NCBI RefSeq assembly: GCF_963676685.1
Contig: NC_092348.1
Span: 84,010,001 to 84,074,000 of the forward strand
Origin: Mytilus edulis
Taxonomy: Eukaryota
Length of the DNA stretch: 64,000 nucleotides
Reading direction: 5' to 3'
Both the position numbers and the translations under genes were made by a program. Below, one piece after another: positions 9,001 to 62,718 of this stretch. The first letter of the stretch is position 1; every line of letters starts with the position of its first letter. Below the pieces are notes generated by a model. It was not told the origin of the DNA. It did not search any database and saw nothing but the letters and a program-made list of their open reading frames with translations.

Positions 9001-12000
9001 GTTTCAGCGGAGAACGTAATCTTATGGAACTAGGCGCTGAATCATTTCCCACAGAATTTGTTTAATGAAATAAAAAGATGAAAGCCGATTGAAACCTATG
9101 CAGTTTTTATACAGGATAATTGTGCAGATTATAAACAATTTATATGATCATATTTGGTAGCAATGACCTTGGTAAGGTAAGGTCTTGGGTTGTGTGGTCT
9201 GTCGATACTTACAAAGTTACAAGTCCAATTTATCTTATATTATATTACATTTGTAATTCTATAAGTGAACTTATACCTGAAGTAATAATTGTGCGGCAGT
9301 GTAAAAAAGAGTGGATACCGCTGGATATTCAAAGATGTCTAGGAATAAAAGAATATGTCGACAGAAAATTAACATGTTCAATATCTTTTTTAAATTTTGT
9401 AGAATATGGGATCTATTTAAAAGGTGGAACAAATCTTGATTATGACATAATTAATTCTTACTCCATGACAGTAGAATGTAGGGACGGAAGACGAAATGAT
9501 ACAGGAAATTATACAGTTAATTTGAAAAGAAATTCAGTAAGTTTATACTATGTTTATAACCAGGTTCAACCCACCATTTTTTCCCTTAAAAATGTCCTGT
9601 ACCAAGTCAGGAATATGGCCATTGTTATATTATAGTTCGTTTCTGTGTGTGTTACAATTTAACGTTGCGTCGTTTGTTTTCTCTTATTTTTGAGTGTAAA
9701 TTGACATTGCGATAAGACGTGTCACGGTACTTGTCTATCTCAAATTCATGTATTTGGTTTTGATGTTATATTTGTTATTCTCGTGGGATTTTGTCTGATG
9801 CTTGGTCAGTTTCTGTGTGTGTTAGTTACATTGTAGTGTTGTGTCGTTGTTCTCCTCTTATATTTATGCGTTTCCCTCAGTTTTAGTTTGTTACCCCGAT
9901 TATGTTTTTTCCATGGATTTATGAGTTTGAACAGCGGTATACTACTGTTGCCTTTATTTATACCTTATGAATGAATATAGAGATTGAGGTTATCTTTAAA
10001 ATATTTTGTAGTGTACATTCTGTTTGAATTATCAAAAATATACACATACAGCCTGAACGAAAGTGTTAAACAAAACGTTTTAGAGCATTATCATTTTATT
10101 TCAATACTTTCAAGAAAAGGTGGGTACATCGAATGGTGAATTCGTCATGTTGATTTGTAGGTGCTAGACATAATCTTTATTAGAAATATAAAAACTACTT
10201 GCTACGTTCGTTTGAATATGTGATTGCTTTTAATGAGAAAAGCTTTAACTCAACAGTAGGGACAAACCCCAAAAATGCTCAATGTTGTATACGAAAGGGC
10301 CTTTTCTTTTTTCTTTTTGAAAAAGAAAATATATCTTAATATGTACAGGATTTGAAGTCACTTGAAAACTTAAAAAGTTGTCTATAATGTCGTCTTTGCA
10401 CAATTCTTGGAAGGTATTTTTGGATAATGTACTCAAATCAATTTCGGTAATTAGGTTGTTGACATATTTTTGATCGCTTATTTCAGGCACCTGTTATCAA
10501 TAACCTACCAGATTCTGTAAGTTTGTTGGAGGATGTGAACACGAATACATTATTACATACACTGAATGTGACGGATATAGAGAGAGACAATAAAACATGT
10601 GCACTGAACCCGAACAGCTCATTATTTGAAGTGTCCTTGATTCCACCATCAAATATAGGTGAGATCATTTTTTATTGTTTGCTTAAATAAAGGCAACAGT
10701 AGTATACCGCGGTTCGAAATTCATAATTAGATTGAGAAAAAAAAAACAAATTCGGGTAACAAACTAAAACTGAGGGAAACGCATCAAATATAAGAGGAGA
10801 ACTACGACACAACAGAAACACAACATTAAAATGTAAAACACAAAGAAACGAACTACAACTTAACAATGGCAATTTTCCTGACTTGATACAGGACATTTTA
10901 AGACAAAAATGGTGGGTTAAACCCGGTTTTGTGGGTGCCAAACCTCCAGTTTTTATGCCAAAGTTAGATATAACATTAAAATGACAGCAATGCATGACAA
11001 GACCATTATACACATACATTGGAGAACACATAGGACTGAGAAACACACGAATAATAGCTAACTAAAGGTTACAGGTTGATAATTAAATACGCCAGAAACG
11101 CGTTTCGTCCACACAAGAATAACTAGAGACGCGCAGATGCAAAAAATGCGAAAGCCAAAAGAAATACAAAGTTAAAGAGCACTGGTAAACGGTGGTCATG
11201 CTTTATGCTTATTGACATTTTATTTCTTTGCACAGATCAGCATGAAGAATTCACCATTTGATATCCTTTTTATTACATCAAATCTAATTTGTTCTTTCAA
11301 ATCACAGAAAGCGATGTTATTGGTGCATTGCATGAGCGAAAAATAATCTTACGGAACTAAGTGTTGAAACATTTTACTCAGAATGATAGTTATGAAGTCA
11401 AAAAGAAAAAGCGAATTGAAACAAATACGTTTTTGTATACCTGATGATAGAGCAGACTATAAACATATACTACTTTCTCTATGTAAGCAAATTCGATAGT
11501 CTTGGTGTTGGTCTTTCGATGCAGTAACCTTGTTAGGTTAAGTCCAGGATGTATTTTCGGTCGATTTTAAGTAACCATATTGAACAAATGAGCAAAATCC
11601 TCTGTTGAAATCAGTAAAAAATGGTGCATAACTTTTTCAACAGTGGTGCTAGAGACCAATTTTTTTAGGACTAATATCAGGGATCCAATACCAAACAAGT
11701 TATTAACTTCATTTTGACCTACACTCAAAAATTAAGATGACAGCTTTTGCACTCAGCGGAATTGCAAACATGTCATAGAGACTGTTGAAGACTGGTCTGT
11801 AATGGATCAGACAAAAATATAACCCGATGGCTTTCATGTTTTCACCATGTGTTTTTCCTTATAAGATATCAATTTCCGCTTTATGTTTTCCGTCGTGTGC
11901 CGCCACATTATCATATGAATTCAATCGCATTCAGAATAGCACGTTACGGTTGCTGATTGGCATTAAACAGTCATGTTTTCTTGCATCATTTTTGTAGATT

Positions 12001-47016: not shown

Positions 47017-47060
47017 TTATTTATTTCGTGTGTGTTTAACTTCCACAACAAGTTCCAGTT
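47017..47060 (-). CDS. Probable terminal exon of ROCO-HEPN (ELELVVEVKHTRNK*)
   Basis: Acceptor ttaatttcag; phase 1 matches the HEPN exon donor TCGG|GTAAGA; TAA at 47019-47017. Confidence 0.6.
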
Positions 47061-50000
47061 CTGAAATTAAATGAAACCATCATTGCATAATAATTATATC
47101 AAAACCTTATTTCTTAAAAAAACACAATTAAAATACAAAAATCAAGGTAACAAGAAAAATCAATCAGGTCAATTCTAATTTTAATGGTACATTAGAACAC
47201 CGCCTAGGTTCTTTCTAATTTACTGGATGTGTTTTTTTTCTGATTGAAAATATTTTGTATGTACTCGTATACTTCTACATTCATATTGGTTACTGTATTG
47301 CGGTTTAAACTTTGTAAGAAATCATCCTAATTAAAACTAGTAGCCACATTAGGAGAGTGCAATTCTTTCTGCATGATTAACGACCATTTAGACCACTCTT
47401 TGTACAACATTGTTTGGCACAGTTTTTGGTATTTTGGGTCATCAATGCTATCCAACTATCCAACGTGTTACTTGTTTTGCTTTCCAATTTTGTTGATCGG
47501 ATCGTCATTGATGAGTCTTATGTAGACGAAACGCGTGTCTGGCTCATTAAATTATAAGCTTGGTACCGGATAACTATTTCGTTTGTTTTTTAATAATTAT
47601 TATCGTTTCATAAAGTGTACTAAATAAAAGTGGTGTACTTACAATATTCGGTATGTAGTCATCTTCACTAGAAGATACTGTTCATTTTTTTTCAAAATTT
47701 CTATGAACATATTTTTTTAATCAATTCATGGTCTCACTGTTTTCAAATTTGTTCAGACTTACTGTTTTACTCAGAAATACGTCAAAATAATGCACGTTGT
47801 ACTAGTATACTGAAGGGATAACTTATAAGAGGAAATAAACTGACAATGTCATGGCAAAACACGAAAAACGACCTGATAAGTTTATTTACAACCACTGGGT
47901 CGATGACACTGCTAGTGGAGCTTTATTCCCAAATGGTATCACCAGCCCAGTGATTTTGCATTTTTTACTTTTCTTGAATCGAGCGTAACTGGTGAGTCTT
48001 TTGGAGACGAAACGCACGTCAAGCGGTAATACTATATTTCATTCATGGTCTCTATAATGAGTTTATTTACTCATATAAAACTTATATCATTTAGACCTCT
48101 ATAAAATAAAAGTAAAATATATATGAGTTTCTTATTTGCGTACATAGCTTTAATCATTTTTATAAATACATGTTTTGGTAACTATAGATTTAATAAATGA
48201 CTGTTAAAAAATTATGAAAAGTAGAGCATGGATGATGAAATCATGTGATTTTCAAATCAATCTTACCCGATTGTGTTTTAATTTCATTTTCAATTTGATG
48301 ATGAATTTCATTCACTTCCTCATTTGCAATTGTTCTAGCTAAAACATCATTGAGTCGTTTTGAATACAGCTTCATTGGATTGTTGCGTTTATCAAATCGT
48401 TTTAAAAGATCCTCTATAATATGACACAGGTCATTGTAACGCTTATCTTCAAGTGCATATGTCGTAGAGTGTTGAAGTTCATTCCTGGTAAGTCGTATTC
48501 GCTCTATGTCATCTCCAGTAGCTGTATCAGTATTCTTTATATCATGCAATGTCTTTGCCCAAGGATATTTGCGGCCACCTGAATTACTCGGAATATGTTT
48601 ATTAAGACTCCATAGCTCTTTTGACAAGTACGTTATATCACATTCACTCCTAGGCTTCACATTTTGTTTGTCTTGTTTAAGAAGATCATATAAAACATCG
48701 GCAAGAATATTCAGTACAATCATTCCCATCTTTGCAAAATTAAATTCCTCTTTTGAAAACTAAAATGAACATTAAAGAATATCAAAAACGTGTTACTAGA
48801 AACGATTTTTGTTTTACAAAAATACTGAGGAAAATTCAAAATTGAAATTCTTTAATTAAATGGCAAAAATTAAAAGCTCACACATATCAAATGAACTAAT
48901 ATTATCTGTCATATTCCTGACTTGGTACAGGTATTTTCTTAAATAGAAAATTGTTGATTAAAACCCGGGTAGCCAAAACCGCTCACTTGTATGACAGTCG
49001 CATAAAATTTCACTATATTGACAACGATGTTTAAACAAAACAAACAGACATCATAGGTAAAAATGTTAAAATAGATGTAGAGCAGTCTACATTGTGTTAT
49101 ATACTTAACCACTTTAAAAAAAAATGTAACACGAAGCTCAAAGAGACATATAGACAAAGCACATAAGAAAAATGTAGGACAAGAATACAAAAAAAAAAAA
49201 TCAATGGCACAATAACGCAATGGCGCGATATATAAATACCGAGCCACGTCAAATGGAAATTCCCAAAAAATAGACTTAAAAGTAAAAGTAATATTCAGAA
49301 CACCAAATGAAAAAAATACTAGTGGAGATTTATTTCCCCGAGGGTATCACAAGCCCAGTAGTCAGCACTTTTTGTGCTGACATGAATTGTCATTGATATG
49401 GTTATATTTATAAAATAACTGTTAACAAAATTTTGAATTTTTCGAAATACTAAGGCTTTTCTACCTCAGGCATAGATTACTTCAGCTGTATTTGGCAAAA
49501 CTTTTAGGAATTTTGGTCCTCAATGCTCTTCAACTTCGTACTTTGTTTGGCCTTTTTTAGATTCGAGCGTCACTGATGAGTCTTTTGTAGACGTAACGCG
49601 CGTCTGGCGTATATACAAAATTTAGTCCTGGTATCTATGAAGAGTTTATTTACAATCACTGGGTTCATGCCACTGCTGGTGGAGATTTATTTCCCGAGGG
49701 TATCACAAGCCCAGTAGTCAGCACTTTTCGTGCTGACATGAATTATCATTGATTTTGTTATATTTATAAATTAATTGTTAACAAAATTTTGAATTTTTTG
49801 AAATACTAAGGCTTTTCTACCTCAGGCATATATTACTTTAGCTGTATTTGGCAAAACTTTAAGGAATTTTGGTCCTCAATGTACTTCAACTTCGTACTTT
49901 GTTTGGCCCTTTTAACTTTTTTAGATTCGAGAGTCACTGATGAGTCTTTTGTAGACGAAACGCGCGTCTGGCGTATATACAAAATTTAGTCCTGGTATCT

Positions 50001-53000
50001 ATGATGAGTTTATAGCACGTCATTTAGATGATATTCAAGACCAAAAGTAGACTTAATAGTAAAATTAATATTCAAAACACCAAATGAAAAATACTATAGA
50101 ACATTATTTAGAGGATAAACAACGTTAGTACCTAGAAAATATACTAAAGACCATCGTGTATTATTTGTGAAGTTGATACGAAATATATATAAAAAAGGTC
50201 TTTGTACCTTACTACGAAGGTTTTTAGGGCGGCATGTTCTTTGACATATCCCTGGATCATTAATTTTCTACTCAGACACTTGTGACATTTTACAAAGTCT
50301 GAGCAGTAGCTTAAAGCTGCTCTTGAATACCGAATAAGTTGGGAAATGTATATTCCATGTGAAGTTGGTATATTGCTCCTAAAAAAGGGACGAATGATAT
50401 CAAGGGGACAGTCAAACTCATAAATCTAAAACAAACTGACAACGCCATGGCTAAAAATGAAAAAGACAAACAAACAACAGCACACATGACACAACATAGA
50501 AAACTAAAGAATAAACAACACGAAAGTACGAAAAATCATAGATTCTGGTACTGGGACTTACGAGATGACTGTGTATGTCGAATTCGGGGTTTAAGTCTAA
50601 ACCTAATGTGGAGGAAGACCTGGCTGTTGTTTCCTTAATTTCGAATGCTGGGGAATGTTTTAAATGAACCCAATCCGAAAAGTGTGGGTTGTTAATGGAC
50701 AGAAAATCATCCATATATCTGAATGTGAAATTAAATGACATCTATTTTTTGGTCTTCTTGTTTTTAACAAGTATCTGAAGGAACTCCGACTCATATGAAA
50801 TAAGAAGAGATCTTTAATTGTATATGTTAGGTCGAACAGTATTTGTATGTTCTGTTGAAAAATTAACCTATGTCAAATGCATAAATTTATACCATTTTTA
50901 TACACACATATTTTTGTAGATGGAGGGGTTAAATACAGCAAAAGACCAAGGGAAATTCAAACTTATAAGGTAGAAATAAACTGACAACTTGATGGCTGAA
51001 AAAAAAACACCAGACAAACAGATATAAAACAGTACACAAAACACATTATAAAAACTAAAAACTGAGCAACACCGACGCCATACTAAAACTTTGGTGATCT
51101 CAGGTTATCAGAAATGATATTCAGACCATGCTCCACATGTGGCACCTGTCGTGCTGCTCATGTAAATCTGTAAGTACAAACCCAATAAAAAGTTCGCGAG
51201 GTCAAATTCGAGGTGAAGATTGTTTTAACGACAACATCATTGAAAAGTGTAGCACAGATATATACAGGATGTTATTTGGAATTTTAATAGGGTCATTATG
51301 ATTGTGCAAGTTCTAAACTAACAAATTTCCCAATCATTTTCTAAGAAATGTATGGTCGGCCAGGTAAACTTTAAAAAACGTAGTCCACAATTAATAAGGA
51401 TCATACATATGGCTCTATATAAAAAAAGAGAAAAAAAGCGAACATAGATATAATCTTTTTGAGAAATTCAAGTGATTGTTAATGCGCATGTAGGTGATGC
51501 ATTAAAAATGAACGATTATAACACTGTCGACATACCGGCTCAATCGTTGTGAAGTTCGTGCAATTCCCAAAGTTTTTTAACATTTATTTTGGTCTAATTA
51601 ACTGATTTATGCAATTTGATAAATCAGTAACTACTGTAACCTCAAATAGCGATTCGTGAAAATGCCAAATTTAGTTTTTATTGTATTTAGTCAAAACAAT
51701 AATTGTTGCACAACTTACCACTTTCGAGCTTCCTGTTCTGGTAACAACGTCAGACACTTTTAAGTTTGTACTTATATTTCCTTGTACACGACAACGTACC
51801 TGAAATAAAATTGAGAATGGAAATGGGGAATGTGCCAAAGAGAAAACAACCCGACCATAGAAAAAACACAACAGCAGAAGGTCACCAACAGGTCTTCAAT
51901 GTAGCGAGAAAATCCCGCACCCGGAGGTGTCCTTCAGCTGGCCCCTAAACAAATATATACTAGTTCAGTGATAATGAACGCCATACTAATTTCCAAATTG
52001 TACACAAGAAACTAAAATTAAAATAATACAAGACTAACAAAGGCCAGAGGCTCCTGACTTGGGACAGGCGCAAAAATGCGGCGGGGTTATACATGTTTGT
52101 GGGATCTCAACCCCCCCTATACCTCTAGCCAATGTAGAAAAGTAAACGCATAACAATACGCACATTAAAATTCAGTTCAAGAGAAGTCCGAGTCTGATGA
52201 AAACATATTATGATATAATCTGCAACTATAGGCTTCTTAAGTTTTTAGCAACAGTGTTCAAAATCATCTCACACTTGATTAAATCAAAACCAAGTTTGGT
52301 CTAAATAATTCCGTAGTATTTAAAAAAAACACATGGTAAAGTTTTTAATCGACATTATCCCAAATAAAGAGTCATTCAAAAGACTATTTCTGAAATCTAA
52401 TATTCCCGTAGATCTCAAGATTGAAACATTGTAAAGACAGATGTTTCTCAAACCACGCCTCTTTTAGGGAGATATTGAATATTCATAGATAATTGATTTT
52501 GTTAACATACTTGTTTCCAGTTATGATCTGTAGGTTGCATCTCATAGAGACATAACTTGGGAATGTTGCCAGTAAATATAGATGTGAATATTGTTTATAA
52601 CGAAATATGTGGTAGCTCTATAGTCGAGGTAGGTATAGTTAAGAAATTTAGTAATAGTTTAAACTCTTAGAAGTTCGTGGCATATAAACGTTGAAAATAT
52701 GCCGCACAGCCCTATATTTTGACCTTCCAAAACACTTCTAGTGCATATGAACCTTCTATTCTAGAATATGATTTTTAGTAAAGTATTCCAAGTAAGGGTG
52801 GTACAGATTTAGCTGTAAAAGGAGTTCCTAAGGGAAATCACATTGCCAATATTTACAGAAATGCAACCTTTAGGCCAATAAGTCCTTTAGAATTCTGATA
52901 ATATTTGAAAAGTGTATGAAATAAGTAGATCTTGACTTTCTTTGCACATTTGCCGTGACTGATTTTCTCTAAAACATATAATTGTAAAGATATATGACAA

Positions 53001-56000
53001 TCACTTACCCTTATGTAATAGATTTAGCCATGGCAGCAATGTTTGTTGACTGACCGGGAAAACACGAAGAAATTTACTAGATATTTGTTCAACACATTTT
53101 AAAAATATTTTTCAATTATATCAGAGGAAAACATTTTTGACAAAGTATACGGAAAACTGGAAACATAGTTAAGAAAAGTTGGTTCGGGCTATAAGTTCTT
53201 AAAATGTCATCCAATATGTATGGTCATGAAACTTTTTTGCAGATATTCTATATATCTAATGTAGTTTTTATAAATTCAGGGAAAACATGAACGTTAGCGC
53301 ATACGGTACAGTTACAGGGGACGTAATGACGTTGCTAACGTAAATTGTTATTTTCCTTACGTCAAACTGACATTTGGTTTGATTACGTATGAAGATTATG
53401 TATACCAATTTTCATAAAAAGGTCAATAGAGCATTTTTTTTTTATTTGATAAATAATATACAGGAAAAAATGACGCTTTTTTCCAACAATCCCGAACATT
53501 TAATAATTATGAGTTATTTGTAAAAATAAAATGTATAGAACATTTATATAAAACAGAAATTACAAACAATTCAACAAAAAACATCCAGTGTTTATCTTTC
53601 AAAACAAAAAGTTCTGTGTTCTTTCGGAAGGAAAAATACGATAACAAATCTAAATTTTGAGCAAATATCTGAAATTTCGACCTCATTTTACTCAAAAAGT
53701 AGCACATGAAGGTATATTTTTTATTACGTATTTGATTTAATCAGATGAAAAATAGCCTATATGCAAATTTTCATCAAAATGTCATCATGGAATCAAAACT
53801 GTATCGTATGCCCTAAAATCGTTACCAACAATAATTCATTAAGAAGTCGTCATTTAATTTTGTCGAAAACAGGAAGAAAGTAGCTTTGTTTTTATGAGCA
53901 TTCTGCACTTTTATTTTTATATAATATCTTTCAAGTAATAAAACAATAATGCATTTACCCCTATGTTATACTTTAAGCCATGTCAGCCCTATTTGTTGAC
54001 TGGTGGACAAAACAAAAGAATATATACTAGATATTCTAAGGATCATTCACCCTATATTTTTTTGTAGTTTTGTCGGTAGTTTCATAGGAGAAGATTAGGT
54101 TAAAACATTCAAGACAACAAAAATGAGGGCTACGATGTACGCCAAGTAGTATCCCCTTGTGGCCTTATATTATTTGAGCGAAAGGACGAACGAAGATATG
54201 TAAAAACAACATCACAATATGCCTCCGCTTTGATTAAGCAATGGTATTGGGTTAACGTATATATATTTTAAATAATCAAGTTCAAATAAAAAGTTCTCAT
54301 TTATCATCTATTGTTTCGTTACCTCTGTGAAAACTGTTTCCTTGTTACCAGTGGTTTCAGAATTTGATTTTTCAAAACTTCGGGACTGCTGAAACAAATC
54401 GAAAATATAAATGATTGTTTTCAGGAAACTAAATGTCTAATTCTCTCGATAATTGAAAAACATCAGTAAATTATTGCCAAGTATAAAGTCAAACAATGAT
54501 CACGATTCCTACCTATAACTATTACTTCACGTATGGACACATAATATTGTAACAATTACATATTTTTTGTCGTTTGTATCATTATTTTAGGACACATTTC
54601 TAACTTACTCTATACAATGCATATAGTTCATCCTGTATATTGATGCTTAGTTCAAGTATTTCTTTAACAACCAAGAAGCAGTGTTGGATAGTGGTACTTA
54701 GGATTATGATATATATTATACGAATACACGAGGGACAAACATTAGCCTGTCTAATCTAATAAAATCATACAATTTTTGGGGTTTTAAAATCATTTATTCG
54801 GTAACATAGTTTAAGAACATAAAGTACCAAGTCAAAACCATATTTTTTTTCAAGATTGAAAGGAAGGAAAAGGAACAGGGCATCATTTTTTTTATGGTCG
54901 GCCAATCCTGTGTCCTTCTTGGTAAATGAAAAAAATACATTCTTGGCTCCACGGGACAACAGTGTGGTTATGTTAAATCAGTGCTTATTTCACTTATTAT
55001 AAGTCTGTAAAGTTTAGGCATTGGTATGCAGGAACAGCTTCTGCTTGAAAAGTTTTCAGCCAATCAAATCAATTTACCTTTGACTGTATTTTCATTGAAT
55101 TTACCTTTTTATTGGACGACCTTCTTTCATCCTTTTTTCGCCTTTTGATGCCTTTTCTATGACCCTGAAAGGAAGATAGACATATCTGTGTTATATTATA
55201 AACGGTGTAGAATTCCCATTCATAAACAAATACCTCCCATGTATAATTGGATTTTATAAAGGAGAAAAAAAACCCAAAGAGGCCCAAGTGCGCCTGTATC
55301 ACTAACTTTATAAACTTGTTGGATTATATGTGAATTAAGAGGAAAATAGATCTTGACATTTTTGTCAGTTTATAAGCTTTTGTCAAATGAATTTTGGTTT
55401 TCAAGAAAGAAAGCAATTAATGCATTTCATCCTCAAGTTCTAATTTTAGTATCTTCAACTTTTTTATTTAAATGATCGCAAAAACAAGAGAGAAATTGAA
55501 GTGACAAAAGACATATTCGTAGCAGAAATTCAGAAACTAACAAATTTCATAATTAAAAAAGGGGATGTAACTCTTTGATTGTGAAATAGAAATTCACAAA
55601 AATTAACTTGATCTGTTAATTATTTTAATGAAAATGTGTAAATGTCTTGTAAATACTGGAAAACATATGTTTTAAGCTATCAACTACAAACCAAATAAGT
55701 GATCAATAGACTCACGAATCTCTAAAAACTCAAGACTCGTAACCTATAATTGTAATCGATTGTAATTGATTACATTTGTTCTAGTAATCGACAGTAATCT
55801 ATAATCGAAGACATTTTCGATTATATGTAATCGTAATTTAATCGATTACAGCAAAAATAAAGATGTTGTCATCGATTACATTTCGGTTACTTTAGTAAAA
55901 TAGTTTGAGGGAATTGTACCTATTTTGAAATGAAAATATGTAATTCTATAGTATAGATTATTATGTATGTATTCATCAGTTTGTAGTACTGATAAAATAG

Positions 56001-59000
56001 AATGTATTTATAAGATTTTAGAGTTTACCAACTGTCTTATTTCTATCTACTGTCTCAAGCTGTATTATGATCAATCAGATCACCTATAAAATTTAATTGT
56101 ATGTCAAGCTTTTGGCACAAATGGATGTGCTTATCAATAAATCAAGACCTTTTGTATTGAAATAAGAAAAAAAGATTTAAAATAAGAAATGTGCCTTGAA
56201 TTAAGTTTTATTACCACATAAGAGTAGTAAGCTTATTTATATCTAAATTTCTGAAAGCATAATTTTCAATAAAAGATAAATAGTTGATAATGTTTTGATA
56301 TATATTAAAGTTTAAAAAGTTCACAACATCCTTTTGACAATAAAAAACTAGAGGCTCTCAAGAGCCTGTATCGCTCACCTGATTCTACTTGAGTTTTTGA
56401 AATCATATAAAAAAATATAAAATTTGGCTAAAAGTAACAACACTTGGGCAGCACCTCATAACGAAAGGAACATTCATGGTATGTTTGATTTCATTCAATT
56501 CAGTGGTTCTTAAGAAGACTTTTGTATGCATTTCCCATAGGGTCCTATGTCAAACTAAGTCCCCCGCTGGCAGCCATCTTGGATGATGGATCGGCTACAA
56601 AGTAACAACACTTGGTCAACACCTTATAACGAACATTCATGCCATGTGTAGTTTCATTCCATTCAGTGGTTCTCTAAAAGAAGACATTTGTATATATTTC
56701 CAATAGGGTCCTATGTTAAACTAAGTCCCCCGCTGTCATCTCTCATTGAGTTATTAATGAATATGTTGATAGTCAAAACTGCAAGATTTTTTGAATATTT
56801 CGCATCCTCAGTAAGAGATTCCATCCAGAAAACAACTGTCAACTTAAATTAAATTTGGAAACAATGCTTCACTACACAATGTTGAGCAACATAATTTTAG
56901 CTGTTAAAAATTTGAAGCATGAAATTGACAGTAAAAAGTAAAAAGTAATCTAATAAATTTTGATAAAGTAATCGATTACAATCGATTAGATACAAAACAA
57001 TAGAATAATCGTTTATTGATCGATCACACGAAAATTCTTCATGAAATCGATTATAAATCGATTACATTTGCCAGTAATAGTCCTCATCCCTGACTCACAG
57101 TTGTATACTATAATGAATTTAAAAGTTGAATCTAAATTGCCATTTTCAAAACATATTCCAAGGACCGAAGTTTGGAATTGTTTAAATTAAAACGGCCAAA
57201 ATTGAATTTAACATTTAAGTCAATAGTAAAATTTCTCAGGAATAGAAAATATATTTCAATTAACTTTTCTTCAATGGCTTAACACATTCCATAAAATTTC
57301 TATTAATTCCAAAAAGTGGTTCACTATTCATCATGTGGGGGAAACGGGACTGACGAACGGACATTTTGTATTCCAAGCGGGATATAAAAACCACAAACTT
57401 TAGAAGCTAGATATGATTGGTAAAAAAAGAAGTTTCTTTAATTTGGATTTTCTTCTTTTTTTATTCGAGCGTCATTGATACATCTTTTGTAGACGAAACG
57501 CATAATTGGTGTTCAAAATGCAAGAACTTGCATAGATTTCAATACTAATAGTCGTATTTTCTCATTCCAATGTGTATGCTTTGTCAAAGACTCACACGAA
57601 TTAATTTATACAATTTATTAAAAGATCATTTATGCCAAATTTGTTTGAATCAATTCAATGGTTACTGATGGAAAACAACGACAAATGAAGCAAAAACACA
57701 AACGTGCACGAAAAAAAGACATATACCACGAGATTACAGTATCCCACCAGGTTCAAGCCAGCCAACATGTTTTAATTTAAAAACAAAATAGCTGAATAAA
57801 TCACTTGTAAGTGTTTTTCTTATTATTTCTGAAATAATTCAATTAAACTTACATGCTGTTTTGACCACTCATTATTCAATTTGTGTGTTGCTGTACAGGC
57901 CTCACAGAAATATTCTGTATTATGTTCTTCAATAAAGACATTTGAACCTTTTACAGAATCTAGATTTACCAAGCCACATTCCCACTTTCTCTCAAATGTT
58001 ACATTTGTCATTTTGTATCTTTTACTAATAATATTGGTTATCTCTGTCTCAACGAAATCAGTAATATGAGAGTATGAACCTCTTTTAATAATTGTACTCA
58101 TCATAAATTCCAGAATTTGAATCTGAATTAAATTTGGACTTTTTGTTATTAGTAATTTTTGTAATCTTGTCTTCTGTAGGTCAAAAATGGCAGTACCTCT
58201 GAAAAGGGCAATTTCGTTTTTTTTCTGTTTAGTTTTCGCAACTTTGGCAACTTCATATTCCCGGCACAGTGAAGCAATCAAATGATTTATTAGATGTGGT
58301 GGAAGAAAATTAAATTTCAAACAGAGCCACGTGGATTTCTTACAGGTGTCTTCTGTGACCTTAAACATCTTATATATGTCACACTCAGGTTTTTCTTTCA
58401 CCATACAAGGTACATAGTAGCAGGATATTTCTGTAGTAGCATCTTCTTCCGATGTAATTGGACGTATAATGATGTCAAATTTCTCCATAACTTTCAAAAT
58501 ATGGTCTTTATGTTTAGACAAAATACTTTGTTCGTTTTTAAATATATCTCCGAGCACCTCACTGTGTAAAACTCCTCTTTGGTTTAAGTCGTCCCACTTT
58601 TCCTTGTTTTTAAAGGTCTTTATTTTCAATTGAAATTTTTCTGCTGTAACAATACATTTAAAGGCATCAGATAACCACTGTGTGTCTAAAATGATATGAT
58701 TAGGAAGATCCTCAAAATATACCAAAGACCGGATTTCATGGTGATACTTCAAGAACAAAGTAAGTTCTGCTTCGCTTAAAGGCTTAGATGAATCAACAGA
58801 AAGATGTTTTATTTCCTGAATCGAAATGATTGGCAACTCTTTCTTTTTCTCTTGTAAGCGCTTTTCCAACTGAATGAACTTTAGCGGATAATCTTTATTC
58901 CATGTTTTAATTGTCCTTGCTAATTTTAGAATACTTTTTCGTATTTCATGGAATACATCGTTGTTATCTTTTGTGTTTGAAATGAATTGTGTATATTCAT

Positions 59001-62000
59001 CCCTTATGTGTCGGCATGCATCTGCTGAAACATTTCTAGCGTATGTATCCAGCCTTTTCATACATGCATTTTGAATCTACAAAAAATAAAAAATAAGTTC
59101 ATTTTTCATATGTCTTAACCAACAGGAGACACATCTGCTGTTATAAAAGGACAAGGTTCACTTATGGCACAACATGGCCTTGAATATTAACTTAATCGTA
59201 AAACACCAAAATAAGTCAGAATTTGGTTTGTAAATGAGTCTATCTCAAAAGTCCTATTGCTAAATACATCACTTCTTTTCATTAAAGTACAATTTTAGTA
59301 AAGTAAGCCCATTTTGGACATTTTTTTCAAAATATGATGGTTTTGTTCAATTTTCAGACCTAACAGCTTTAGAAACACCTCGGCCGCCACTTACGACCCA
59401 AAATGTGTTGTGACCAAAAGATTCCAATTTGAATACAGAATTTATCAATATAAAAACTTTTTGGATCATGGATGGCGGCCAAAGTTAATTATGCCAAAAA
59501 CAATTAAAATTATGGGAAAAAAGTACCAAAATTGACCCTAAAATACAAATGATGATTACTTAAGGGATCATAGCTTCAAAAATTGTGAAGGTAAGTGCCA
59601 GAAAATATATTTTTGTCTTAATAGTATTATCACAAGTATTTCTACGTGAAATTTGTAAGTTTTTGGCTGGATTTAAAAACATAAAAAATTTAGGGCCAAT
59701 TTCAACCCTTCGTGAACCTTCTCCTTTGCAACTCCCATGATTAACCTAGCCCTTATAGTTGTTAAGTAGCAACCAAACTGCAAAAACACTGCACAATGAA
59801 GATTTAAGGCGCAATCTGTTACGTCGATTGTTCAAAAGCAATGTTTATAAGCATATATATTTATTGTTACAAAACCTTCTATTTGAATTTCAATTTATTA
59901 CATTCAGTGGTTCTAAAATTGTTGCTCATCGAACAAGGACCATTTTTTAAATTTTTTTCTTGACATAACTTATTTAATTTCTGTATGCAGTCAATTATTG
60001 ACTATAACAATACAACCATCAATGCTCAAATAGTAACACGAGCATGTGTTTAGTGGACATTAAATTGCCCAAATGTCATGCAGTAGTTATGTATTATTCA
60101 TATTTTCACCACAAAAAAACAAAATTATATTTTCCGAATGATCAAGTACTATATAATTTGGAAGGATATACCAACATAAGTGCTTTAAAAAAAAGTGGAA
60201 AATGAGATTACTTACACCAGAGACCAAAGTACACTTACGTTAACAACTATAAGTCAACATACGGCCTTCAACAATGAACACAACTCAAACGGAAAAGTCA
60301 GCTATAAAATGTCCAAAAAGGACAAATGTTAACAATGAAAAAAAATTAACGGCCTGATTTTTGTGAAAAAAAAACAACAAACAACTAACGGAACACATAT
60401 GATATAGAGTAACAACAGACAACTACTGAATAACAGGCGCCTGAATTGTAGCAGGCACAAATAAAATGTGTCGCCGCACCTAGCATGGGATTGCACAACA
60501 TATGGACACACTATCAAAATCTGTTGAAAAGGGAATAACTTATCTGACCGATTCAAAGCAGAAATACAAATTACAAAAACACAGACCAGAAGAAGCAGGG
60601 TATTTATATATTCCACAATAAAATAGACACTAAGTTCAAATCTGAGAGAACTCGTAGATACTGACAGTCAATAACAAATTATACAAATTCATGTATCTAA
60701 GACTAAAACATCAATTAGTACACATCAAACAGCCGTGGATTCAGTGTAAAGATGTCATTCATAGATGGGGAAAACATGACCTTGTGTAATGCCAAAATAC
60801 AGTTGTAAAACTGAGAAAATCCATACGTATATGTATAACAAATATATATAAATCAATAATAGAAGTTTGTTTTTACTAACTTGTAACAAAATCATTAAAA
60901 TCCAAAACGTCACTACAGATACGGGCAAAACAAACGAGTAGTATTATGATTATAAAAAAAGGAAAATTAACAATAAGGAAAGAAAAGAACAGTCATTACC
61001 GTTTATACTTAATTTTCTTAAAGTACGTTTTTTTTGCATAAATTTCAGCAGCATATTTAGAAAATTATCGATTAGGCGAAATCAAGAAAATAGGACAAAA
61101 TTTATCATTTGAAGACAAGATGATTATTTGTGGAAAAATAGGATATAGGTAGATATCTACATTATGATCATTTTTGCATACCCTCCCTCGTTAGCAATTC
61201 TCTTCCTATTTTGATTTTTTAAAGTGTAAGACAATTATTGCATTTTACTCTTATGCCGGCAATGTTTCTGTTTCGTTTCGGATAAAAAGAATAATAATAT
61301 AAAAATATATAAGATACGTCAATGATTATTCAGCCTAATTGTGGTTGCGATTAAGTTTAAGAGAAAACCAAATTTGAAAACGTTAACGACGACGGACAAC
61401 GACTGACGCAAGGGTTCTATTTTTCAAAAAATATCTATGTTCTAAATACATGTGGCTCATAATCCATCATTTTGTTGAAGAACATCGACTAAAAGTATGT
61501 CAAATATTTTAATATGATGTTATCAAAACTTATGTTTATTTTTTTACTAGAGAGTCAAGTTTTTAACATCATATTTATATACTAATACTGAAGCAAATAA
61601 TAAATGGAAAGGATTACAATTTTGATCTGAGCGTCACTGATGAGTCTTATGTAGACGAAACGCGCGTCTGGCGTATAAAATTATAATCCTGGTACTTTTG
61701 ATAACTATTTACACATATTTCTTTTTATTTGTAAGTTCCACGATCATTTGTCTTTATCATCTTTATCTAATCTTCTAGAACAACTGAATGTCAATCTATA
61801 AAGGTTATTCAATGTAAAATCAATACCTCTTCTCCCTCGGATATTTTAACTTCATCCTTCCATGTACCAACTAGAATGACTGGTGGACAAAGGGGTTGGT
61901 TTGTACTATGATTGCTTGAATTACGTTTTTCCTGTGTACAGTAACAATGTATCGAGTCCATCCATAATCCAAACATTTCTAAAAGATATATCAAAACCAC

Positions 62001-62718
62001 AATATTGTTTTTATCATTCATATTACAGAACAAGAATTGTATTGTCTAGGACTTTTATATTAGTTCTGTTTATTTGGTACGAAATATCTGTATATGTTTC
62101 ATGTACTACATTTTGGAAAACAAATATATCGTAAAAGATTTCTGAGTGGTAAGAGTAGACAAAAACGAATAAAAGTAATCCAAAACCATAGGGCGTGATA
62201 CTAACAAATTAAACTGTAGAAAGATTCACTTAAAAACTCCGTCTTTAAGTAAATAAATCTTATTTGTACTTCAAAATATTACACAACATTACCTTGAGCT
62301 TCAATGTCGTTAGATTTGTTAAGTTTTGTAACAACAATATAAATTGCATCTGGCGATAAAAAGGTCTGATGTGTCTGGTAAAATTCTGTGTCTCCGGCAA
62401 AATCCCAAAGGAGTAAGGTTGCATAATCTTCTTTATCACGAAGGTCAACTTCTGATTGTAACATACTTTTGATTTCCTTTTCTGCTTGTTCAAATGGATG
62501 TTCATGAGATACAGATGCATTTTTAGGTTGTAATATATTAAGTGACTGAGACGCTGAATTCACAGATTTTGCACTAGAACTGGTTGGTTTGTCGATACTA
62601 TCAATTTTGTACCCGGTTCCTTCTACTGATGCTTTACTGTTTACATTAACCTGGCTCTTAAGACTTTCGTCGTAGGGTTGTAACAGCCTTTTATGCAGTT
62701 CGGCTTCTTCGTTGATGC
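47017..62718 (-). CDS. ROCO-family protein (Roc GTPase + COR) with C-terminal DZIP3-like HEPN domain, 5'-partial, 7 exons, about 827 aa visible
   Basis: Exons in transcript order: 62718-62293, 61978-61827, 59076-57853, 54388-54323, 51799-51719, 48759-48267, 47060-47017 (TAA). All GT-AG, phases 1/0/0/0/0/1 compatible, frame open throughout. G3 LWDFAGD, G4 VILVGTWKD, G5-like FISNT, COR motifs LKYHHEIRSLVYF..IILDTQWL and YYVPCM, HEPN DIERIRLTRNELQH. The P-loop exon(s) must lie beyond the window. Confidence 0.85.
47405..47580 (+). mobile_element. Partial retrozyme-like copy with hammerhead variant (TTGATGA core at 47508); a second degenerate copy at about 47880-48070
   Basis: cgtcattgatgagtcttatgtagacgaaacgcgtgtctggc matches the family 1 hammerhead and its flanks. 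Confidence 0.7.
48267..48759 (-). CDS. DZIP3/hRUL138-like HEPN domain exon
   Basis: FSKEEFNFAKMGMIVLNILADVLYDLL...CDITYL...IPSNSGG..W.......TDTATGDDIERIRLTRNELQH...YNDLCHIIEDLLKRFD; DIT-x-L and DIERIR-x-x-RN-x-x-x-H match the family pattern; R-x4-H at 48486-48469. Confidence 0.85.
49320..50012 (+). mobile_element. Non-LTR retrozyme-like tandem dimer (364 nt between cleavage sites) with two hammerheads
   Basis: Near-identical direct repeats; hammerheads at 49567-49610 (GAAA mutated to GTAA) and 49931-49974 (intact); GTC sites end at 49604 and 49968. Confidence 0.85.
50575..50815 (-). pseudogene. Reverse transcriptase remnant, Penelope-like
   Basis: YESEFLQ...*..FNFTFRYMDDFLSINNPHFSDWVHL...FEIKETT; YxDD catalytic motif in FRYxDD context, with an in-frame stop upstream. 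Confidence 0.75.
51719..51799 (-). CDS. 81-nt phase-0 linker exon (VRCRVQGNISTNLKVSDVVTRTGSSKV)
   Basis: Acceptor ttttatttcag, donor GTG|GTAAGT, open frame, symmetric. Confidence 0.6.
51806..52202 (-). mobile_element. Truncated copy of the 26052 retroelement tail
   Basis: taaaattgagaatggaaatggggaatgtg... aligns with 26054 onward; TGAAA on both sides. Confidence 0.7.
53297..53813. mobile_element. PIF/Harbinger-like MITE
   Basis: TTA-GCGCATACGGTACAGTT ... AACTGTATCGTATGCCC-TAA; 17-bp TIR with 2 mismatches, TWA flanks. Confidence 0.65.
54323..54388 (-). CDS. 66-nt phase-0 linker exon (QSRSFEKSNSETTGNKETVFTE)
   Basis: Acceptor tttgtttcag (CAGCAG tandem), donor GAG|GTAACG, open frame, symmetric. 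Confidence 0.6.
55738..57092. mobile_element. Probable hAT-type non-autonomous element with clustered palindromic (GT)AATCGATT(AC) subterminal motifs
   Basis: Many AATCGATT variants at 55750-55890 and 56965-57070; right end CATCCCTG; left terminus eroded; contains a nested insertion. Confidence 0.5.
56344..56735. mobile_element. Helentron/HINE-like element with about 168-bp tandem core repeats
   Basis: Terminal hairpin AGGCTCT-ca-AGAGCCT; repeat aaagtaacaacacttgg...aaactaagtcccccgctg at 56431 and 56599. Confidence 0.6.
57853..59076 (-). CDS. End of Roc (G5) plus COR domain exon
   Basis: 412-aa ORF; FISNT, TWNKDYPLKFIQLEKRL, FLKYHHEIRSLVYFEDLPNHIILDTQWLSDAFKCIV, MEKFDII, YYVPCMV, FLPPHLINHLIA; acceptor tttttgtag, donor CAT|GTAAGT. 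Confidence 0.9.
59149..59724. mobile_element. MITE (Kolobok-like)
   Basis: aaa-GGACAAGGTTCAC ... GTGAACCTTCTCC-ttt, 1 mismatch. Confidence 0.65.
61631..61674 (+). ncRNA. Minimal type I hammerhead ribozyme (family 1), intact core
   Basis: Stem I GCGTCA/TGGCGT, core CTGATGA, stem II GTCT-tatgt-AGAC, GAAA, 1-2 bp stem III with palindromic GCGC loop, GTC cleavage triplet (cut after 61668). Confidence 0.85.
61827..61978 (-). CDS. Roc domain exon with G4 motif
   Basis: EMFGLWMDSIHCYC...PPVILVGTWKDEV; W-x-x-S-I and PPVILVGT-x-x-D are Roc hallmarks. Confidence 0.88.
62293..62718 (-). CDS. Roc domain exon: Ser-rich insert and G3 motif
   Basis: GINEEAELHKRLLQPY...ATLLLWDFAGDTEFYQTHQTFLSPDAIYIVVTKL; WDFAG-x-x-x-FY-x-TH-x-x-FL is typical of Roc. 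The acceptor at 62719 is weak. Confidence 0.88.

What the first reader, a model, noticed from the sequence alone, without database searches (positions are those of the whole stretch)
47017..62718. Roc-COR GTPase fused to a catalytically intact HEPN RNase: candidate dimerisation-gated immune nuclease in an invertebrate
Seen in sequence: the Roc, COR, two linker, HEPN and terminal exons splice in one open frame, and the HEPN keeps R-x4-H (RNELQH, 48486-48469). There is no kinase after COR, unlike LRRK1/2. Established: COR mediates nucleotide-regulated dimerisation of ROCO proteins; HEPN-superfamily RNases (Cas13, Csm6, RNase L/IRE1 KEN, bacterial toxins) need two HEPN domains to build one composite active site; DZIP3-like HEPNs are known to be fused to NTPase and death-fold modules in invertebrates. 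Inference: the GTP/GDP cycle could switch an RNase on by bringing two HEPNs together, a switch-effector design parallel to bacterial NTPase-HEPN anti-phage systems and RNase L. I am not aware of a functional description of such a fusion, but cannot search to confirm novelty.
Basis: partly seen in the sequence, partly recalled or inferred. Interest (0 to 1): 0.88.

Follow-up and report, generated by a model that had tools for sequence, protein, structure and literature searches.

The report
Mussel Roc-COR GTPase with HEPN tail
This is a real, transcribed and already annotated blue-mussel gene that joins a Roc-COR GTPase switch to a predicted HEPN RNase; at least 65 similar genes exist in this genome, they are probably immune or cell-death effectors, and none has been tested at the bench.

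Summary
A Mytilus edulis RefSeq protein (XP_071175749.1, 1172 aa, at least 13 isoforms) matches the window exons at 92.9-100% identity. Spliced contigs from four studies carry two of the predicted junctions exactly.

Three corrections:
- The Roc P-loop exon lies just outside the window.
- A third linker exon of 60 nt (55164-55105, very basic) was missed.
- The N-terminus is a very acidic disordered region, not a recognisable sensor.

The C-terminal domain is a HEPN of the DZIP3 type. 39 of 49 relatives match PF18738. A confident model has RNELQH at the end of helix 3. Csm6, Roquin, Swt1 and sacsin HEPN domains are among the best structural matches.

At least 65 loci in this genome have the same COR-then-HEPN order. 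Close paralogues carry a caspase, CARD or Death domain in that slot instead, which marks it as an effector slot.

RNase activity, GTP control and dimerisation gating are untested. A HEPN homodimer prediction gave no verdict. This scan has already reported the same family elsewhere in this genome. I found no paper describing a Roc-COR-HEPN fusion.

The parts
62293..62718 (-). Roc exon. It carries a roughly 100-aa insert and then switch II / G3 (DFAGD).
   Evidence: Pfam Roc 32.5 bits, above cut-off. Acceptor and donor read. Matches P0241 residues 319-466.
61827..61978 (-). Roc exon with the G4-like TWKD motif.
   Evidence: Splice sites read. Matches P0241 residues 463-518. Motif position.
57853..59076 (-). 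COR exon (COR-A plus COR-B), 408 aa, with donor GT at 57852-57851.
   Evidence: Pfam COR-A 48 bits, above cut-off. The AlphaFold model matches the C. tepidum Roco COR domain 3dpt (E 1.4e-12, 353 columns), and also LRRK1 and LRRK2. Matches P0241 at 100%.
55105..55164 (-).
   Evidence: Matches P0241 residues 925-945. Canonical AG/GT sites. Present in all 11 isoforms read and in the M. trossulus orthologue. Charge.
54323..54388 (-). Linker exon 1 (22 aa). Its NAGNAG acceptor gives isoforms with or without Q.
   Evidence: Sequence. The joint to linker exon 2 is seen in 4 of 4 runs. Isoform linkers listed.
51719..51799 (-). Linker exon 2 (27 aa).
   Evidence: Sequence. Joints on both sides are seen in 4 of 4 runs.
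48267..48759 (-). HEPN (DZIP3-type) exon.
   Evidence: PF18738 scores 23.1-23.3 bits here, below the cut-off of 27, but 39 of 49 relatives match, best 5.4e-11. AlphaFold pLDDT is 90. HEPN structures are enriched among the best structural matches.
48469..48486 (-). RNELQH, the R-N-x3-H motif of HEPN.
   Evidence: Read. R92, N93 and H97 are kept in at least 90% of 49 relatives and in 28 of 28 paralogue loci where the exon was found. It lies at the end of model helix 3, as in canonical HEPN.
47017..47060 (-). Terminal coding exon (ELELVVEVKHTRNK, then stop).
   Evidence: Translation equals the last 14 residues of P0241. A G|GTAA donor was found in 18 of 28 paralogue loci by a heuristic scan, and a small downstream exon encoding a similar tail in 13 of 28.

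Best explanation
Shown:
- This is one transcribed Mytilus edulis gene.
- Its product runs in this order: a roughly 210-aa very acidic disordered N-terminus (encoded outside the window), a Roc GTPase, COR-A and COR-B, a roughly 70-aa basic linker, and a DZIP3-type HEPN domain that keeps R-N-x3-H.
- It belongs to a mussel expansion with at least 65 loci in this genome. In that expansion the same Roc-COR unit carries HEPN, caspase, CARD or Death domains after COR.

Inferred:
- Roc-COR acts as a nucleotide-dependent switch that sets the oligomeric state or conformation of the protein.
- The HEPN domain is the effector. It cuts RNA once two HEPN domains come together to form a composite active site.
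- The outcome is antiviral or cell-suicide RNA degradation, in the manner of RNase L.
- The acidic tail and basic linker may add autoinhibition or localisation.
For: One gene:
- Spliced contigs in 4 of 4 runs join linker 1, linker 2 and the HEPN exon. One contig extends 625 nt further upstream.
- RefSeq protein P0241 matches the window exons at 92.9-100% identity.
- 65 of 87 HEPN exons in the genome have a COR exon upstream on the same strand, and none has one downstream within 12 kb.

Roc-COR:
- Pfam matches.
- G1, G3 and G4 motifs present.
- The COR model matches CtRoco, LRRK1 and LRRK2.

HEPN:
- Family-level PF18738 matches.
- Motif conserved.
- Model topology agrees with the published description of the fold.
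- Csm6, Roquin, Swt1, sacsin and LsoA HEPN domains appear among the top structural matches.

Selection:
- The M. trossulus orthologue is 95.7% identical in HEPN, against 89% in COR and 73-76% in the linkers.

Effector slot:
- Paralogues carry a caspase, CARD or Death domain after COR.
- This parallels the bacterial AP-GTPase-COR systems with variable C-terminal effectors (PMC8195603).
- Some paralogues hold two HEPN domains in one chain, which fits a need for HEPN pairs.
Against: - No enzymatic, genetic or induction data exist for any member. Searches found none.
- This protein's own PF18738 score is below Pfam's cut-off.
- The structural Z-scores (up to 7.5) are in the range that helical bundles can reach by chance.
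- The HEPN homodimer prediction gave no verdict.
- The COR-to-linker junction was not seen in reads.
- There is no recognisable sensor domain.
- Some animal HEPN domains bind RNA without cutting it.
Confidence: 0.6

Rival explanations
1. The HEPN domain does not cut RNA. It serves as an RNA-binding or protein-interaction module, and the protein is a signalling scaffold whose output is assembly, not cleavage.
For: Some eukaryotic HEPN domains are reported as RNA binders, for example the sacsin HEPN (title listed). This protein's own Pfam score is sub-threshold. No activity data exist.
Against: R, N and H of the motif are kept in at least 90% of 49 relatives and in 28 of 28 paralogue loci. HEPN is the most conserved part between orthologues, together with the P-loop exon. 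In paralogues the same slot holds a caspase, which is an enzyme.
Confidence: 0.15
2. The RNase is real, but COR-mediated dimerisation does not gate it. Control would come from release of autoinhibition (acidic tail against the basic linker or the RNA-binding face), from ligand-driven higher-order assembly, or from proteolysis. Roc would act only as a timer.
For: The N-terminus has net charge -87 and the linker exon is 55% K/R. The linker of about 70 aa matches no Pfam family and has a biased composition, so HEPN may be loosely tethered. Paralogues with two HEPN domains in one chain would not need dimerisation. From my own knowledge, CtRoco becomes a monomer on binding GTP.
Against: Nothing tested here separates this reading from the main one. 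In solved Roco and LRRK structures COR-B is a dimer interface, and COR-B is present here.
Confidence: 0.2
3. The HEPN exon belongs to a separate gene, or COR transcripts end before it, so the fusion is an annotation artefact.
For: Some database ORFs consist of the COR exon read through into the intron (P0124-P0126). The 57853 donor was not seen in reads.
Against: The HEPN exon is spliced to two upstream coding exons in four studies, and contigs continue 233-625 nt beyond them. All 11 RefSeq isoforms read and the M. trossulus orthologue join COR to HEPN. The exon order is kept at 65 loci. The HEPN exon starts in phase 0 directly after an acceptor.
Confidence: 0.02

Closest known systems
ROCO proteins (LRRK1/2, DAPK1, Chlorobium tepidum Roco)
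   Same: A Roc GTPase is followed directly by COR-A and COR-B. The predicted COR fold matches 3dpt, 6hlu, LRRK1 and LRRK2.
   Different: There is no kinase and no LRR. A HEPN domain sits where the kinase sits in LRRK2. The Roc domain has a roughly 100-aa insert between switch I and G3.
Bacterial AP-GTPase-COR conflict systems with variable C-terminal effectors (Kaur et al. 2021, PMC8195603)
   Same: One Roc-COR unit appears in many paralogues per genome, each with a different C-terminal effector. Here the effectors are HEPN, caspase, CARD or Death.
   Different: This is an animal genome. There are no N-terminal LRRs; the N-terminus is an acidic disordered region here, and Ank, TIR, Schlafen or HEPN in paralogues. 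The effectors the paper names in its text do not include HEPN. I could not read its figure.
DZIP3/hRUL138-type HEPN proteins of invertebrates (Anantharaman et al. 2013, PMC3710099; pearl oyster NACHT-HEPN genes, PMC9646362)
   Same: The HEPN family is the same, the R-x4-H motif has N after R, and the genes form large lineage-specific expansions in bivalves alongside immune-type domains.
   Different: [quoted passage not shown] Roc-COR is not listed. In the pearl oyster the HEPN sits at the N-terminus of NACHT proteins; here it sits at the C-terminus of a GTPase.
RNase L and IRE1 (KEN domain)
   Same: A regulatory nucleotide-binding module is fused to a C-terminal HEPN-superfamily RNase that works as a pair, with an antiviral or stress role. 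This is an analogy in design only.
   Different: The KEN domain is a circularly permuted HEPN driven by a kinase or pseudokinase and, in RNase L, by 2-5A bound to ankyrin repeats. No kinase is present here and no ligand is known.

Membership tests
ROCO (Roc-COR) proteins | Ras-like Roc GTPase domain with nucleotide-binding motifs | tested here: met
   Pfam Roc 50.9 bits on P0241, cut-off 27. G1 GEKGAGKT, G3 DFAG and a G4-like TWKD are present. The P-loop exon lies outside the window.
ROCO (Roc-COR) proteins | COR domain (COR-A and COR-B) directly after Roc in the same chain | tested here: met
   COR-A 48-49 bits, cut-off 35.3. The model of the whole exon aligns over 353 columns to the CtRoco COR domain 3dpt at E 1.4e-12.
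LRRK / DAPK subgroup of ROCO | Protein kinase domain next to Roc-COR | tested here: not met
   No kinase family was found in P0241 at E up to 0.01. UniProt's automatic name 'non-specific serine/threonine protein kinase' on some relatives is not backed by any domain match.
HEPN superfamily | Four-helix up-down bundle with an insert between helices 2 and 3 | tested here: met
   The model (pLDDT 90) has helices at 3-30, 42-52, 81-96 and 105-126, with a loop at 53-80. The best structural matches include Csm6 4rgp (Z 7.5), Roquin, Csm6 6tug, AF_0298, Swt1, sacsin and LsoA. The Z-values are moderate.
HEPN superfamily | R-x4-6-H motif at the end of helix 3, usually with N after R | tested here: met
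   RNELQH occupies exon residues 92-97, at the end of helix 81-96. The expected position is as described in PMC3710099.
HEPN superfamily | Metal-independent RNase activity that needs two HEPN domains | not testable with these tools
   The homodimer prediction gave no verdict. This needs a bench assay.
Pfam HEPN_DZIP3 (PF18738) | Score at or above the curated cut-off of 27 bits | tested here: inconclusive
   This exon scores 23.1-23.3 bits, E 6e-5. 39 of 49 relatives match at E up to 0.01, best 5.4e-11. Paralogues P0203 (48 bits) and P0198 (33.2 bits) pass the cut-off.
Bacterial-type AP-GTPase conflict systems | Variable effector domain after COR among paralogues | tested here: met
   After COR, paralogues carry HEPN, a caspase (P0255, P0267, P0275) or CARD (P0262, P0274). 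The Death match (P0289) has no Roc or COR match recorded.
Bacterial-type AP-GTPase conflict systems | Rapidly evolving N-terminal LRR sensor | tested here: not met
   No LRR was found. The N-terminus is 43% D/E with net charge -87.

The most novel reading that the evidence does not exclude
Mussels run an animal counterpart of the bacterial AP-GTPase conflict systems. One Roc-COR switch has been copied dozens of times with exchangeable death effectors (HEPN RNase, caspase, CARD, Death). The HEPN version is a GTP-controlled suicide or antiviral RNase: an RNase L-like design reached with a GTPase in place of a pseudokinase.
Probability: 0.3. Interest if true: 0.8.

Novelty: new variant of a known kind. 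Interest (0 to 1): 0.5.

Why it matters
ROCO proteins are studied mainly through LRRK2 and Parkinson's disease, where the output of the Roc-COR switch is a kinase. A natural family would be a simpler system for studying how Roc-COR controls an effector. In this family the same switch drives an RNase, and in sister genes a caspase or a death-fold adaptor. It would also add a new class of innate-immune effector in bivalves. Bivalves lack adaptive immunity, suffer viral and transmissible-cancer epidemics, and matter for aquaculture. Finally, it extends to animals a design so far described for bacterial defence.

Tried and rejected
- **HEPN homodimer prediction.** Score 0.30 against a mark of 0.32, so no verdict. 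It is not evidence either way.
- **Foldseek of the HEPN model against PDB.** Nothing at E up to 0.001. The wider VIA-align search was needed.
- **Profile of the HEPN family against PDB sequences.** Only a chance match.
- **Only one read-laying run of 6 kb was allowed.** The 57853 donor and the 48267>47060 junction were therefore not covered by reads.
- **N-terminal exons by homology to paralogues.** Nothing found. They were located only once the gene's own RefSeq protein was retrieved.
- **In-exon stop at 48241.** I rejected the doubt when paralogue tails, conserved donors and P0241 all supported the spliced form.
- **No joined exon model was built or searched.** Exons were searched one by one by reference. 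Full-length analyses used database proteins returned by the tools.
- **Large ORFs elsewhere in the window.** The ORFs at 9144, 28926 and 37782, and the intronic ORF at 50454-50741, have no Pfam match.
Full report
**What is there**

The window is G000:C5:84010001-84074000 of a 1.37-Gb genome. Contig C5 is 97,338,103 bases long, the same length as the Mytilus edulis RefSeq chromosome that carries protein P0241. On the minus strand, Pfam finds Roc (32.5 bits, cut-off 27) in 62563-62279 and COR-A (48 bits, cut-off 35.3) in the 59076-57853 exon. It gives a sub-threshold HEPN_DZIP3 match (23.3 bits, cut-off 27) in the 48759 exon.

**Is it one gene?**

Four lines of evidence say yes.

- *RNA contigs.* I laid the contigs of four runs from four studies on 48400-54399. 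Each run has one contig with the joint 48759>51719. Each also has the joint 51799>54323: one contig in three runs and two in X3. Both joints have GT..AG ends on the minus strand. The HEPN exon is therefore spliced to both small linker exons exactly as predicted, and these runs hold spliced RNA. The contigs continue 233 nt (X1) and 625 nt (X2) beyond linker 1. The alignment leaves the genome at about 54388-54390, so they are spliced to something further upstream.
- *Genome-wide exon order.* A search of the genome finds at least 87 HEPN-exon copies and 100 COR-exon copies. 65 HEPN exons have a COR exon upstream on the same strand (median 3.9 kb), and none has one downstream within 12 kb.
- *Gene models in other species.* RefSeq and other models in M. 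galloprovincialis, M. edulis, M. trossulus, M. californianus and M. coruscus join Roc, COR and this domain in one protein.
- *This gene's own annotation.* P0241 (XP_071175749.1, 'uncharacterized protein isoform X5', 1172 aa) matches the window exons at 92.9-100% identity. The tblastn HSPs reach residue 1158. Eleven isoforms of the gene were read; their labels run from X1 to X13.

I built and searched no joined exon model. Exons were searched by reference, and full-length work used database proteins returned by the tools.

1. The P-loop exon (GEKGAGKT) lies outside the window at the equivalent of 64362-64622.
2. All 11 isoforms read, and the M. trossulus orthologue P0249, contain a further 60-nt exon at 55164-55105. 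It encodes GHRKGIKRRKKDERRSSNKK and sits between COR and linker 1. The annotated path is therefore 57853>55164, then 55105>54388. The frame is unchanged.
3. The terminal exon is real. The tail of P0241 equals its translation. A heuristic scan found a G|GTAA donor in 18 of 28 paralogue loci and a small downstream exon encoding a similar tail, such as MTIEVEIEH, in 13 of 28.
4. The N-terminus is not a known sensor domain. Residues 1-212 are 43% D/E with net charge -87. Many 33-36-nt exons spread over at least 25 kb upstream encode them, and the isoforms differ in which of these exons they include.

**Is the C-terminal domain a HEPN?**

- Of 49 relatives aligned, 39 match PF18738 (best E 5.4e-11). 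Paralogues P0203 and P0198 pass the curated cut-off.
- R92, N93 and H97 of the exon are kept in at least 90% of relatives. The motif is intact in all 28 paralogue loci where the exon was found.
- AlphaFold2 with this alignment gives pLDDT 90.1. The model has helices at 3-30, 42-52, 81-96 and 105-126, with a long loop between helices 2 and 3. [quoted passage not shown] That is where Anantharaman et al. place the motif, and they also describe the frequent insert between helices 2 and 3 (PMC3710099).
- Foldseek found nothing. The wider structural search puts Csm6 4rgp first (Z 7.5, rmsd 3.1 Å, 98 residues). It also lists Roquin, Csm6 6tug, AF_0298, Swt1, 1wwp, sacsin, LsoA, an AMPylated HEPN toxin and HepS among the top 50 of 48,161 chains.
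- Each of these Z-scores is modest for a helical bundle. It is the enrichment in HEPN domains, together with the motif and the profile matches, that makes the assignment secure.

**Roc-COR**

P0241 has G1 at residue 277, G3 (DFAG) at 430 and a G4-like TWKD at 505. A roughly 100-aa insert lies between switch I and G3. The model of the COR exon (pLDDT 71) matches the C. tepidum Roco COR domain over 353 columns (E 1.4e-12), and also LRRK1 and LRRK2. COR-B is therefore present. No kinase is found.

**Context**

- By sequence the family is essentially confined to Mytilus, with one weak hit in an oyster.
- Of 118 full-length P-loop relatives fetched, 77 end with GDDIERIRxxRNxxxH.
- Close paralogues with 58-70% identity in COR carry something else after COR. 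P0255, P0267 and P0275 have a caspase domain, and P0262 and P0274 have CARD. P0289 has a Death domain, but no Roc or COR match is recorded for it.
- At the N-terminus, paralogues have ankyrin repeats, TIR, Schlafen AlbA_2 or a second HEPN.
- The position after COR is therefore an exchangeable effector slot. The closest published parallel is the bacterial AP-GTPase-COR systems, which have at least 24 alternative C-terminal effectors and several paralogues per genome (PMC8195603).
- The fusion partners published for DZIP3-type HEPN do not include Roc-COR. In the pearl oyster this HEPN is fused to NACHT. In Aplysia, TIR-Roc-COR proteins were noted without a HEPN.
- Four full-text searches found no paper on a Roc-COR-HEPN protein.

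**Selection**

Against the M. trossulus orthologue, identity by exon is:

| Exon | Identity |
|---|---|
| P-loop exon | 96.6% |
| HEPN | 95.7% |
| COR | 89.2% |
| Roc insert exon | 82.4% |
| Three linker exons | 73.5-76.2% |

The HEPN domain is therefore under at least as much constraint as the GTPase core.

**How it most likely works**

Shown: the domain order, the intact motifs, transcription and the family pattern.

Inferred:
- Roc-COR acts as a nucleotide-dependent switch of conformation or oligomeric state.
- The HEPN domain is the effector, and two HEPN domains must meet to cut RNA.
- Paralogues with two HEPN domains in one chain (P0203, P0001) fit a need for pairs.
- The direction of the switch is open. 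From my own knowledge, CtRoco is a dimer without GTP and a monomer with it.
- The acidic tail and the basic linker suggest an additional electrostatic autoinhibition or a localisation signal. This is speculation.
- The homodimer prediction gave no verdict.

**Verdict**

My own count of at least 65 loci agrees with that note. The architecture is a new variant of ROCO proteins that the searchable literature does not describe. Its proposed mechanism is plausible but untested.

Noticed in passing
L031:5000-L033:9600 (window-equivalent about 69000-93500, outside the window): The N-terminal 212 residues of the product (43% D/E, net charge -87, repeats such as ENDVEYSEPEE) are encoded by an array of 33-36-nt exons spread over at least 25 kb. 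The RefSeq isoforms differ in how many of these exons they include.
   Followed up: partly
window 55105-55164 (-): A 60-nt exon encodes a very basic, NLS-like stretch (GHRKGIKRRKKDERRSSNKK) between COR and the linker exons. It is conserved in the M. trossulus orthologue.
   Followed up: partly
window 54385-54390 (-): The acceptor of linker exon 1 is a NAGNAG site (cagCAG). Isoforms P0292 and P0295 lack the first Q.
   Followed up: partly
window 49400-50600 and 51800-52200: These intronic stretches attract very many RNA contigs at 90-95% likeness, with summed depth up to about 56,000. They look like expressed high-copy interspersed repeats. One abuts the acceptor of linker exon 2.
   Followed up: no
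proteins P0203 and P0001 (other Mytilus loci): Some paralogues hold two HEPN domains in one chain. P0203 has the order HEPN-Roc-COR-HEPN, and P0001 has two HEPN domains in tandem after Roc.
   Followed up: partly
proteins P0255, P0267, P0275, P0262, P0274, P0289, P0211: Close paralogues of the same Roc-COR unit end in a caspase or CARD domain instead of HEPN. P0289 carries a Death domain, with no Roc or COR match recorded. P0211 has an N-terminal Schlafen AlbA_2 domain together with a C-terminal HEPN.
   Followed up: partly
proteins P0124-P0126, aligned to window 57829-59076: Some database ORFs (one M. californianus RefSeq model and two Logan contigs) consist of the COR exon of paralogues read through the donor to the first intronic stop. 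They may be retained-intron forms, DNA contigs or annotation artefacts.
   Followed up: no
G000:C12:73.5-76.8 Mb: A cluster of COR exons has no HEPN exon downstream. These may be the paralogues with other C-terminal modules.
   Followed up: no
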